A stretch of DNA of 63,660 nt, counting the filler, from Octopus bimaculoides (Eukaryota): the NCBI RefSeq assembly GCF_001194135.2. It is 6 parts of 6 records of this genome, joined end to end, with 100 filler letters (N's around TTAATTAATTAA, not from the genome) between each part and the next. Parts side by side here need not be neighbours in the genome. Positions count along the whole stretch, not along the records: positions 1 to 20,127 come from NC_068985.1; 5 more parts are not named here. The stretch is one strand, 5' to 3'. A program made the position numbers and the translations under genes. Below the pieces are notes generated by a model that did no database searches, had not been told where the DNA came from, and was given only the letters and a program-made list of their open reading frames with translations. Within the stretch, counting starts at the first letter, position 1; every line of letters begins with the position of its first letter. This document shows positions 16,287 through 16,507 of this stretch, piece after piece.

Positions 16287-16507
16287 TCAATGGAAGAAAC
16301 TGAAACAAGTTGTAGCAATAACAAAACTGAAAGAAGCTTGGATATTTAGAGAAGACGCCCGGAGTTTCAATCCTTCAGCATTGCATCCGTCTGTGGCACA
16401 TGTACGGAAACATACATTTTTCTGTCGACCTCTCGTTACGTTCCTTATTATGCATTTTTCGTCTTGGAAAAAAGTTGCACAGCCTCGCGTAAATAAAATC
16501 TGGATAC
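16287..16507 (-). CDS. Terminal coding exon of a GPI-anchored Ly6/uPAR three-finger (Quiver/Sleepless-like) protein
   Basis: Acceptor tttcctttttt..gtatcgctgcAG ends at 16508, phase 1. The exon encodes (G)IQILFTRGCATFFQDEKCIIRNVTRGRQKNVCFRTCATDGCNAEGLKLRASSLNIQASFSFVIATTCFSFFH*: RGC, C, CxxxCxxDGCN, an NVT sequon, then a hydrophobic tail. TGA at 16289-16287. Confidence 0.8.

What the first reader, a model, noticed from the sequence alone, without database searches (positions are those of the whole stretch)
16287..16507. Orphan terminal exon of a GPI-anchored Ly6/three-finger (Quiver-like) protein
Seen: a clean phase-1 acceptor, five cysteines in an RGC..C..CxxxCxxDGCN pattern, an NVT sequon, a small-residue omega region and a hydrophobic stop-terminated tail. 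Established: Ly6/three-finger proteins such as Lynx1 and Drosophila Sleepless/Quiver modulate nAChRs and Shaker channels. Inference: a cephalopod channel or receptor modulator that ORF callers miss, because the track starts it at an intronic Met. The signal peptide and CYxC exons were not found upstream, so the first introns would be very long or the exons lie in gaps.
Basis: partly seen in the sequence, partly recalled or inferred. Interest (0 to 1): 0.7.

Follow-up and report, generated by a model that had tools for sequence, protein, structure and literature searches.

The report
Last exon of octopus Ly6 gene

Summary
On the minus strand, 16507-16287 follows a pyrimidine-rich AG acceptor in phase 1. 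It encodes (G)IQILFTRGC...CFRTCATDGCN plus a 30-residue hydrophobic tail and TGA.

The exon is not orphan. Its 73 residues are 100% identical to the C-terminus of XP_036358658.1 (LOC118763348, Octopus sinensis) and XP_014772068.1 (LOC106870476, O. bimaculoides). An O. vulgaris model shares its first half. These genes span 155-171 kb, so the signal-peptide exon and first domain exon lie outside the 20-kb piece.

The full protein has a signal peptide, ten invariant cysteines ending in CN and an invariant N-glycosylation sequon. The gene layout is the classic Ly6/uPAR one. Spliced transcripts of a homologue use the same acceptor position.

Pfam QVR is the best match for 10 of 11 family members, but the scores shown stay below the curated cut-off. 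AlphaFold models retrieve almost only Ly6/uPAR and three-finger structures.

The GPI anchor and the channel or receptor-modulating role remain inference.

Verdict: a real exon of an annotated, uncharacterised member of a small cephalopod Ly6 family. Low novelty.

The parts
16508..16531 (-). 3' end of the last intron: polypyrimidine tract and AG acceptor (ATTTCCTTTTTTGTATCGCTGCAG)
   Evidence: Read directly from the sequence. The annotated proteins P0012 and P0018 stop being collinear with the genome exactly at the Gly codon G|GT. The same acceptor position is seen in a homologue by comparing a spliced contig with a genomic contig.
16380..16507 (-). Second half of the Ly6/uPAR (LU) domain, running from loop 2 to the C-terminal CN: (G)IQILFTRGCATFFQDEKCIIRNVTRGRQKNVCFRTCATDGCN. 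It carries Cys6 to Cys10.
   Evidence: 100% identical to residues 74-116 of XP_036358658.1 and XP_014772068.1. Aligns to positions 49-86 of 86 of Pfam QVR. All five cysteines are invariant in 11 family members.
16434..16442 (-). N-glycosylation sequon N-V-T
   Evidence: The Asn is invariant and an N-x-T/S sequon is present in all 11 aligned family members. Coordinates checked.
16290..16379 (-). C-terminal propeptide-like tail AEGLKLRASSLNIQASFSFVIATTCFSFFH. It has a candidate omega site A-S-S (16358-16350), a short polar spacer and an uncharged hydrophobic end. This is the presumed GPI-attachment signal.
   Evidence: Read from the sequence. All paralogues have an equivalent R-(G/A/S)-small-small stretch followed by a hydrophobic tail. 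The best 12-residue Kyte-Doolittle mean is 1.77, against 2.0-3.0 in the five paralogues compared. No GPI predictor was available, so this is inference.
16287..16289 (-). Stop codon TGA
15524..16286 (-). Putative 3' UTR, running to the first AATAAA (15529-15524, 758 nt after the stop). The true extent is unknown.
   Evidence: Hexamer scan only. Homologue mRNAs carry 3' UTRs of about 0.3-1.9 kb. Inferred, not shown.
16410..16415 (-). Internal GTATGT (codons Val32-Cys33 of the exon). The O. vulgaris gene model CAI9723085.1 apparently uses it as a splice donor.
   Evidence: P0017 matches the exon up to ...RGRQKN and then diverges. Position checked. That model loses Cys8 to Cys10, so it is probably a mis-prediction or a non-productive isoform.

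Best explanation
Window 16507-16287 (minus strand) is the last coding exon of the octopus orthologue of LOC118763348 (O. sinensis) / LOC106870476 (O. bimaculoides). This gene encodes a 146-residue precursor made of a signal peptide, one ten-cysteine Ly6/uPAR (LU, three-finger) domain and a hydrophobic C-terminal tail.

The gene has the archetypal LU layout: a signal-peptide exon, a first LU exon carrying Cys1-5 (CSRCDS...YYGECE...PCP...FCS), and this exon carrying Cys6-10, the CN end and the tail. The introns are phase 1, and the intra-domain intron falls at the tip of loop 2. The gene spans about 155-171 kb, so the other exons lie outside the 20-kb piece.

**Shown:** the identity of the exon, its splice phase, the family and its conservation, and the LU-type cysteine pattern, gene layout and fold.

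**Inferred:** the precursor enters the secretory pathway and is N-glycosylated at NVT. It forms the five LU disulfides and is cut near R-A-S-S, where a GPI anchor is attached. It then sits on the outer membrane leaflet, where its loops bind another surface protein.

**Only by analogy:** a role as an ion-channel or receptor modulator, as in Drosophila QVR/SSS and mammalian Lynx1. I give this about 0.2.

The confidence of 0.93 applies to the identity of the exon and gene, not to the GPI anchor or the function.
For: **Identity**
- The exon translation is 100% identical to the last 73 residues of P0012 (XP_036358658.1) and P0018 (XP_014772068.1). It is identical to P0017 (O. vulgaris CAI9723085.1) up to residue 31 of the exon.
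- Gene ranges are 155,287, 166,558 and 171,284 bp.
- No upstream exon is found in the window by tblastn or by a motif scan.

**Family**
- Eleven full domains were aligned, from Octopus species, Argonauta hians and unnamed transcriptome runs.
- All ten cysteines, the sequon Asn and the GCN end are invariant.

**Splicing**
- mRNA-type contig L001 and genomic contig L002 become identical (99.5%) exactly at TTTGCAG|GGATCCAG. This is the position homologous to the window's acceptor.
- The middle exon in L014 is bounded by a phase-1 acceptor and a phase-1 GC donor.
- This matches the published LU gene archetype (PMC6600238).

**Classification**
- Pfam QVR is the top match, aligned end to end (1-86 of 86), for 10 of 11 members. 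The best E-value is 1.3e-5.
- The domain-only AlphaFold model has pLDDT 67.8, pTM 0.58 and a core at 77-84.
- Nearly all of its best 40 Foldseek PDB matches are LU or three-finger folds: uPAR, C4.4A, Lypd6, Lypd6b, GPIHBP1, TEX101, CD177, snake three-finger toxins and activin/BMP receptor ectodomains. Probability reaches 1.00 and TM-score 0.60.
- The full-length model gives the same kind of matches.

**Constraint**
- O. sinensis and O. bimaculoides differ at three residues, all in the signal peptide. They differ at none in residues 29-146.
Against: - Every Pfam QVR score shown is below the curated cut-off: 17.6-24.2 bits against 27.3. The exon alone gives only E = 0.062.
- Profile searches against PDB sequences found nothing.
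- Foldseek E-values are no better than 2.4e-3, and the models are of medium to low confidence.
- The C-terminal tail is short and is the least hydrophobic of the six family members compared.
- UniRef names the O. vulgaris model 'Secreted protein', so the GPI anchor is not established.
I have no RNA-seq for this gene itself. The species of the window (O. bimaculoides, O. sinensis or a near relative) is therefore not determined.
- No functional data exist for any family member. Literature searches found none.
Confidence: 0.93

Rival explanations
1. The exon and gene are as described, but the mature protein is not GPI-anchored. It would be secreted, like SLURP-type LU proteins, or held by its C-terminal hydrophobic segment.
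For: The tail is only about 14 uncharged residues. Its best 12-residue Kyte-Doolittle mean is 1.77, the lowest of the six family members compared. UniRef calls the O. vulgaris model 'Secreted protein'. LU proteins occur in both secreted and anchored forms (PMC6600238).
Against: All paralogues keep the same layout after the CN end: a basic residue, two or three small residues, a short spacer and a hydrophobic end with no downstream charged cytoplasmic stretch. That is the layout of a GPI signal. In the LU archetype the GPI signal sits in exactly this exon.
Confidence: 0.25
2. The protein is a GPI-anchored LU protein whose job is not channel or receptor modulation. It might organise epithelial or glial junctions, act in adhesion, or protect against complement-like attack, as other invertebrate and vertebrate Ly6 proteins do.
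For: LU proteins carry out very diverse functions (PMC6600238). From my own knowledge, several Drosophila Ly6 proteins (Boudin, Coiled, Crooked) act in septate-junction assembly. Nothing here ties this protein to neurons. Its structural neighbours are uPAR, C4.4A, Lypd6 and GPIHBP1 as much as toxins.
Against: The best sequence model is QVR, whose founding member modulates Shaker channels and nAChRs (PMC4735452). That Pfam family also covers many insect Ly6 proteins with other roles, so this is weak evidence.
Confidence: 0.5
3. The segment is a chance ORF, a dead pseudo-exon, or part of a repeat.
For: The piece is repeat-rich, with mariner fragments, SINE-like copies and microsatellites. The exon alone scores only E = 0.062 on Pfam.
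Against: The reading frame, the acceptor and all cysteines are intact. The exon is 100% identical to annotated proteins of two species. Homologues score E = 3e-19 by tblastn and 8e-13 by phmmer. There is no second copy in the window. Only a handful of paralogues exist among 1.84 billion representative proteins.
Confidence: 0.02

Closest known systems
XP_036358658.1 (LOC118763348, Octopus sinensis) and XP_014772068.1 (LOC106870476, O. bimaculoides), both 'uncharacterized protein', 146 aa
   Same: The last 73 residues are identical to the window's exon. The splice junction (..NDN|G|IQILF..) is the same. The gene is very long, at 155-167 kb.
   Different: Nothing detectable at the protein level. 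Which of these species, or which near relative, the window comes from could not be settled.
Octopus and Argonauta paralogues: LOC115212746 / LOC106882999 (UniRef 'Protein quiver'), LOC106875585 (UniRef 'UPAR/Ly6 domain-containing protein'), LOC106875693, CAI9740554.1
   Same: The same ten-cysteine domain and the same CSRCDSR..YYGECE..PP.P.PCP N-terminal half. They share the sequon, the GCN end, the tail layout and the intron position. Their genes are also very long, about 237-243 kb.
   Different: They are 52-66% identical over the domain. The window's protein has RGC where the others have RDC, lacks one residue before Cys5, and has the weakest hydrophobic tail of those compared.
Drosophila QUIVER/SLEEPLESS and the Pfam QVR family (PF17064)
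   Same: A single ten-cysteine LU domain ending in CN. QVR is the best-scoring Pfam model, aligned over its full length. QVR/SSS is a Ly6 protein that acts on Shaker-type K channels and nAChRs through loop 2 (PMC4735452).
   Different: All scores shown are below Pfam's gathering threshold. No orthology is shown. The function of the octopus protein is untested. The highly conserved proline-rich loop-1 region of the cephalopod family is not a QVR feature that I could verify.
Vertebrate LU proteins: uPAR domains, C4.4A (LYPD3), Lypd6, Lypd6b, GPIHBP1, CD59, Lynx1
   Same: The predicted three-finger beta fold. The three-exon, phase-1 gene architecture with the GPI signal in the last exon.
   Different: Sequence identity in the structural alignments is only 13-24%. 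Cys8 and Cys9 are separated by three residues (CFRTC), rather than adjacent as in typical vertebrate Ly6 proteins (this last point is from my own knowledge). There is no detectable sequence homology to PDB chains.

Membership tests
Ly6/uPAR (LU, three-finger) domain superfamily | Plesiotypic ten-cysteine pattern (five disulfides) in a domain of about 80-90 residues | tested here: met
   C-x2-C-x10-C-x9-C-x7-C-x18-C-x8-C-x13-C-x3-C-x4-C. All ten are invariant in 11 family members. Cys6 to Cys10 are encoded in the window. The pattern definition comes from PMC6600238.
Ly6/uPAR (LU, three-finger) domain superfamily | Last cysteine followed by Asn (C-terminal CN) | tested here: met
   DGCN at 16391-16380. 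GCN is invariant in the family.
Ly6/uPAR (LU, three-finger) domain superfamily | Gene layout: a signal-peptide exon plus two LU exons, phase-1 introns, the domain split at the tip of loop 2, and the GPI signal in the last exon | tested here: met
   The window has a phase-1 acceptor before G|IQILF. In a homologue, both introns are phase 1, shown by comparing mRNA and genomic contigs. The junction lies between model strands 63-70 and 76-84. The archetype is described in PMC6600238.
Ly6/uPAR (LU, three-finger) domain superfamily | Three-finger beta fold | tested here: met
   Two AlphaFold models (pLDDT 55.5 and 67.8) each retrieve almost only LU or three-finger structures from the PDB. Probability reaches 1.00, TM-score 0.60 and the best E-value is 2.4e-3. 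Caveat: the models are of medium confidence, no match has E < 1e-3, and disulfide geometry was not inspected.
Ly6/uPAR (LU, three-finger) domain superfamily | Significant match to a curated sequence model of the clan (QVR, UPAR_LY6, UPAR_LY6_2, DUF753) | tested here: inconclusive
   QVR is the top hit for 10 of 11 members (E = 1.3e-5 to 8e-3). DUF753 hits 6 members and UPAR_LY6_2 hits 1. All scores shown are under the gathering cut-offs.
Pfam QVR (Quiver/Sleepless-type Ly6) | Score at or above the Pfam gathering threshold (27.3 bits) | tested here: not met
   The full-length proteins score 17.6-22.5 bits (22.5 for P0012). The trimmed domain of this protein scores 24.2 bits. The exon alone scores 14.7 bits. 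I therefore describe it as QVR-like and do not file it as a QVR family member.
Pfam QVR (Quiver/Sleepless-type Ly6) | Modulates Shaker-type K channels and/or nAChRs through loop 2 | not testable with these tools
   This needs electrophysiology or co-immunoprecipitation. The property of QVR/SSS is taken from PMC4735452.
GPI-anchored proteins | C-terminal signal: small omega, omega+1 and omega+2 residues, a polar spacer and a hydrophobic tail. The signal is cleaved and replaced by GPI. | tested here: inconclusive
   By eye the layout is A-S-S, then LNIQAS, then FSFVIATTCFSFFH. Hydropathy is the lowest of the six family members compared. No GPI predictor was available and there is no experiment.

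The most novel reading that the evidence does not exclude
The gene belongs to a cephalopod-restricted, very strongly constrained Ly6 subfamily. The family has at least four or five paralogues per octopus, each spread over 150-240 kb. The mature protein is identical between O. sinensis and O. bimaculoides. Under this reading, members would be GPI-anchored neuronal modulators of nicotinic receptors or Kv channels. They would be the functional counterparts of Lynx1 and Sleepless in a lineage that evolved a large brain and sleep-like states independently.
Probability: 0.15. Interest if true: 0.45.

Novelty: already known. Interest (0 to 1): 0.15.

Why it matters
As it stands this matters little. 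The exon is part of existing RefSeq and ENA gene models, and LU-domain proteins are widespread in animals.

The work has three modest uses:
- It gives a family assignment (LU / QVR-like) to loci that RefSeq lists only as 'uncharacterized protein'.
- It flags that the O. vulgaris model CAI9723085.1 probably mis-splices inside this exon and loses three cysteines.
- It shows that a reader without tools can correctly recognise a lone LU exon from its cysteine pattern and splice phase.

If a member of this cephalopod family were shown to tune nAChRs or Kv channels, it would interest cephalopod neurobiology.

Tried and rejected
- **Word-index protein search.** The search with the 73-residue exon found nothing, although an identical annotated protein is in that collection. 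This was a sensitivity limit of the tool, not absence.
- **Phage DNA search.** No match. It was irrelevant in hindsight.
- **P0006.** This 588-aa repeat protein with '...YCSHDGCG...' units was the sixth phmmer hit. It matches only residues 27-51 of the query in eight repeated stretches. I rejected it as an unrelated, repeat-driven hit.
- **Upstream exons in the window.** I searched with tblastn of five homologues and of the P0012 N-terminus, with a C-x2-C...C motif scan, and by listing stop-free Cys-rich segments. Only chance-level hits appeared (E > 0.1).
- **The O. vulgaris tail.** The tail specific to that model, SYELNYMPYQWFPTCGP, is not in the window.
- **PDB sequence searches.** Profiles of the family gave no hits.
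- **DNA of orthologue and paralogue loci.** None could be fetched, because every gene range exceeds the 100-kb limit.
- **Species of the transcriptome and genome runs.** SRR27666xxx, SRR8281666, SRR9969973 and ERR12921338 could not be identified from the literature.
- **Literature on these loci or on octopus Ly6/quiver.** None found.
- **Rfam and tRNA scans of the piece.** Empty.

Full report
**1. What is in the sequence**

Read on the minus strand, the finding begins after ATTTCCTTTTTTGTATCGCTGCAG (16531-16508). GT at 16507-16506 completes a split codon. Then come 72 codons and TGA at 16289-16287.

The peptide is (G)IQILFTRGCATFFQDEKCIIRNVTRGRQKNVCFRTCATDGCN-AEGLKLRASSLNIQASFSFVIATTCFSFFH*.

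- A phase-1 acceptor behind a pyrimidine-rich tract (70% pyrimidine over 40 nt).
- Five domain cysteines ending in DGCN.
- An NVT sequon (16442-16434).
- A small-residue stretch, R-A-S-S.
- An uncharged hydrophobic end.

The mechanical ORF list starts the frame at a TTG 17 codons inside the intron (16559).

**2. Is it more than chance?**

- The exon alone gives only a weak Pfam match: QVR, E = 0.062, 14.7 bits. It aligns exactly to the C-terminal part of the model, positions 49-86 of 86.
- phmmer of the 72 residues against 1.84 billion representative proteins returned five genuine homologues, with E = 8e-13 to 2e-9 and 42-50% identity.
- A sixth hit, a repeat protein, was rejected.
- tblastn of those homologues against the window finds this exon only (E = 3e-19). 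Everything else has E > 0.1.
- The exon is not repeated in the window. It has no DNA match to the paralogue contigs fetched. It is not a multicopy element.

**3. What it is**

Homologue P0001 is a complete 156-aa precursor. It has a signal peptide, then CSRCDSR..YYGECE..PP.P.PCP...YCSIVRET, then GIQLLFARDC...CFRTCDTDGCN, then a hydrophobic tail.

A search seeded with P0001 returned P0012, which is XP_036358658.1, 'uncharacterized protein LOC118763348' of Octopus sinensis. Its last 73 residues are identical to the window's exon.

P0012's 90% cluster has two other members:
- XP_014772068.1 (LOC106870476, O. bimaculoides), also identical over the exon.
- CAI9723085.1 (O. vulgaris), identical up to ...RGRQKN and then divergent.

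That divergence point coincides with an internal GTATGT (16415-16410). The O. vulgaris model therefore probably uses a false donor, and it loses Cys8 to Cys10.

So the exon is not orphan. It is the annotated last coding exon of a known, though uncharacterised, gene.

**4. Why the upstream exons are missing**

The three orthologous gene models span 155,287 bp, 166,558 bp and 171,284 bp. Two paralogues span about 237-243 kb.

The piece offers only 3.6 kb upstream of the acceptor, and no trace of the N-terminal exons is in it.

**5. Gene architecture**

Contigs from public sequencing runs show the structure directly in a homologue.
- mRNA-type contig L001 (CDS = P0010) and genomic-type contig L002 are 99.5% identical from TTTGCAG|GGATCCAG onward, and unrelated before it. 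This is the position homologous to the window's GCTGCAG|GTATCCAG, in the same phase.
- Genomic contig L014 holds the middle exon. Its bounds are ...ctcttttcag|ATGCACAAG (phase 1, just after the signal peptide) and ...TCTAAAG|gcaagt (phase 1, a GC donor).

This gives three coding exons: a signal-peptide exon, an exon for LU half 1, and an exon for LU half 2 plus the tail. Both introns are phase 1.

A review describes exactly this as the archetype of LU-domain genes. It places the intra-domain intron at the tip of loop 2 and the GPI signal in the last exon (PMC6600238). In the structure model the junction (residues 73/74) lies between strands 63-70 and 76-84.

**6. Family assignment**

*Conservation.* An alignment of eleven domains from Octopus species, Argonauta hians and unnamed transcriptomes shows all ten cysteines invariant. 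The sequon Asn and the GCN end are invariant too.

*Pfam.* QVR is the best family for 10 of 11 members and is aligned end to end. The best E-value is 1.3e-5. This protein scores 24.2 bits as a trimmed domain and 22.5 bits at full length. DUF753 and UPAR_LY6_2 follow. All scores shown are below the curated cut-offs. I therefore call it QVR-like and a member of the LU superfamily, not a certified Pfam QVR member.

*PDB sequences.* Profile searches against PDB sequences found nothing.

*Structure models.*

| Model | pLDDT | pTM |
|---|---|---|
| Full precursor | 55.5 | 0.37 |
| Domain only | 67.8 (core 77-84) | 0.58 |

Foldseek with either model returns almost only LU or three-finger structures: uPAR, C4.4A, Lypd6, Lypd6b, GPIHBP1, TEX101, CD177, snake three-finger toxins and activin/BMP receptor ectodomains. 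Probability reaches 1.00, TM-score 0.60 and the best E-value is 2.4e-3.

*Existing names.* UniRef already names paralogues 'Protein quiver' and 'UPAR/Ly6 domain-containing protein'.

**7. How it most likely works**

*Shown:* the domain type, the exon structure and the conservation. The mature protein (residues 29-146) is identical between O. sinensis and O. bimaculoides, while the signal peptide differs at three positions. This argues for strong constraint.

*Inferred:*
- Secretory entry and cleavage after ...LIHA.
- N-glycosylation at NVT on the second finger.
- Five LU disulfides.
- Cleavage near R-A-S-S with GPI attachment.
- Display on the outer leaflet, where the loops bind a partner.

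The GPI step is plausible, because every paralogue keeps the basic / small-small-small / spacer / hydrophobic layout. It is not proven. This protein's tail is the shortest and least hydrophobic of those compared, with a Kyte-Doolittle mean of 1.77 against 2.0-3.0.

The channel or receptor modulator role rests only on analogy with QVR/SSS, which acts on Shaker and nAChRs through loop 2 (PMC4735452), and with Lynx1. LU proteins do many other things. I put the modulator reading at about 0.2.

**8. Literature**

No paper in the searchable library mentions these loci or an octopus Ly6/quiver protein.

**9. Verdict**

The implied novelty ('orphan', 'missed') does not hold, and the function is untested.

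The finding is a correct identification of an ordinary, already annotated exon. Interest is low.

The most novel reading still open is that this is a cephalopod-specific family of neuronal prototoxin-like modulators. The C-terminal exon found homologues only in cephalopods, or in unnamed runs, among 1.84 billion representatives. The full-length profile could be searched only through the word-indexed tool, so the taxonomic restriction is provisional.

Noticed in passing
window 19887-20127 (+): Fragment of a mariner-type transposase. It matches Pfam Transposase_1 (PF01359) at E = 6.3e-8 and 32.8 bits, above the cut-off of 24. It contains ...HDNNAPAH... and is cut off by the edge of the piece.
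   Followed up: partly
window 17582-17977 (-): A 132-codon stop-free stretch about 1.1 kb upstream of the exon, inside the intron. By eye it resembles the N-terminal helix-turn-helix part of a mariner transposase, but it has no Pfam match. It is probably a decayed transposon.
   Followed up: partly
window 1636-1744 / 18322-18430 and 2746-2822 / 17141-17217: Two pairs of inverted copies (81% and 94% complementary) of short dispersed elements that abut TA/TG microsatellites. They are likely SINE-like repeats of the octopus genome.
   Followed up: no
window 6566-6613 and 6624-6671: An exact 48-nt duplication on either side of a 10-N gap. It looks like an assembly or gap-closing artefact rather than biology.
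   Followed up: no
window 16410-16415 (-): A GTATGT inside the exon coincides with the point where the O. vulgaris model CAI9723085.1 leaves the exon (…RGRQKN|SYELNY…). That model lacks Cys8 to Cys10 and the tail. It is probably a mis-annotation or a non-productive isoform. Its alternative tail is not in the window.
   Followed up: partly
L014 1412-1421: In a homologue of unknown species, the intron inside the LU domain has a GC donor (AAAG|GCAAGT) rather than GT. This was inferred by comparing mRNA and genomic contigs.
   Followed up: partly
window 3627-3913 (+), 9079-9162 / 9663-9746, and the N runs: A long (GAT)n array of about 96 units. An 84-nt direct repeat at 88% identity, with copies starting 584 nt apart. 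Eight N gaps of 10-760 bases, often flanked by TA/TG microsatellites. The gaps suggest a short-read scaffold assembly.
   Followed up: no
window 6404-6748 (-): An ORF with a single weak C2H2 zinc-finger-like motif (…CNLCGCLFRILSGLKSHIRHH…). Pfam zf-C2H2 gives E = 0.098, below the cut-off. An assembly gap interrupts it.
   Followed up: partly
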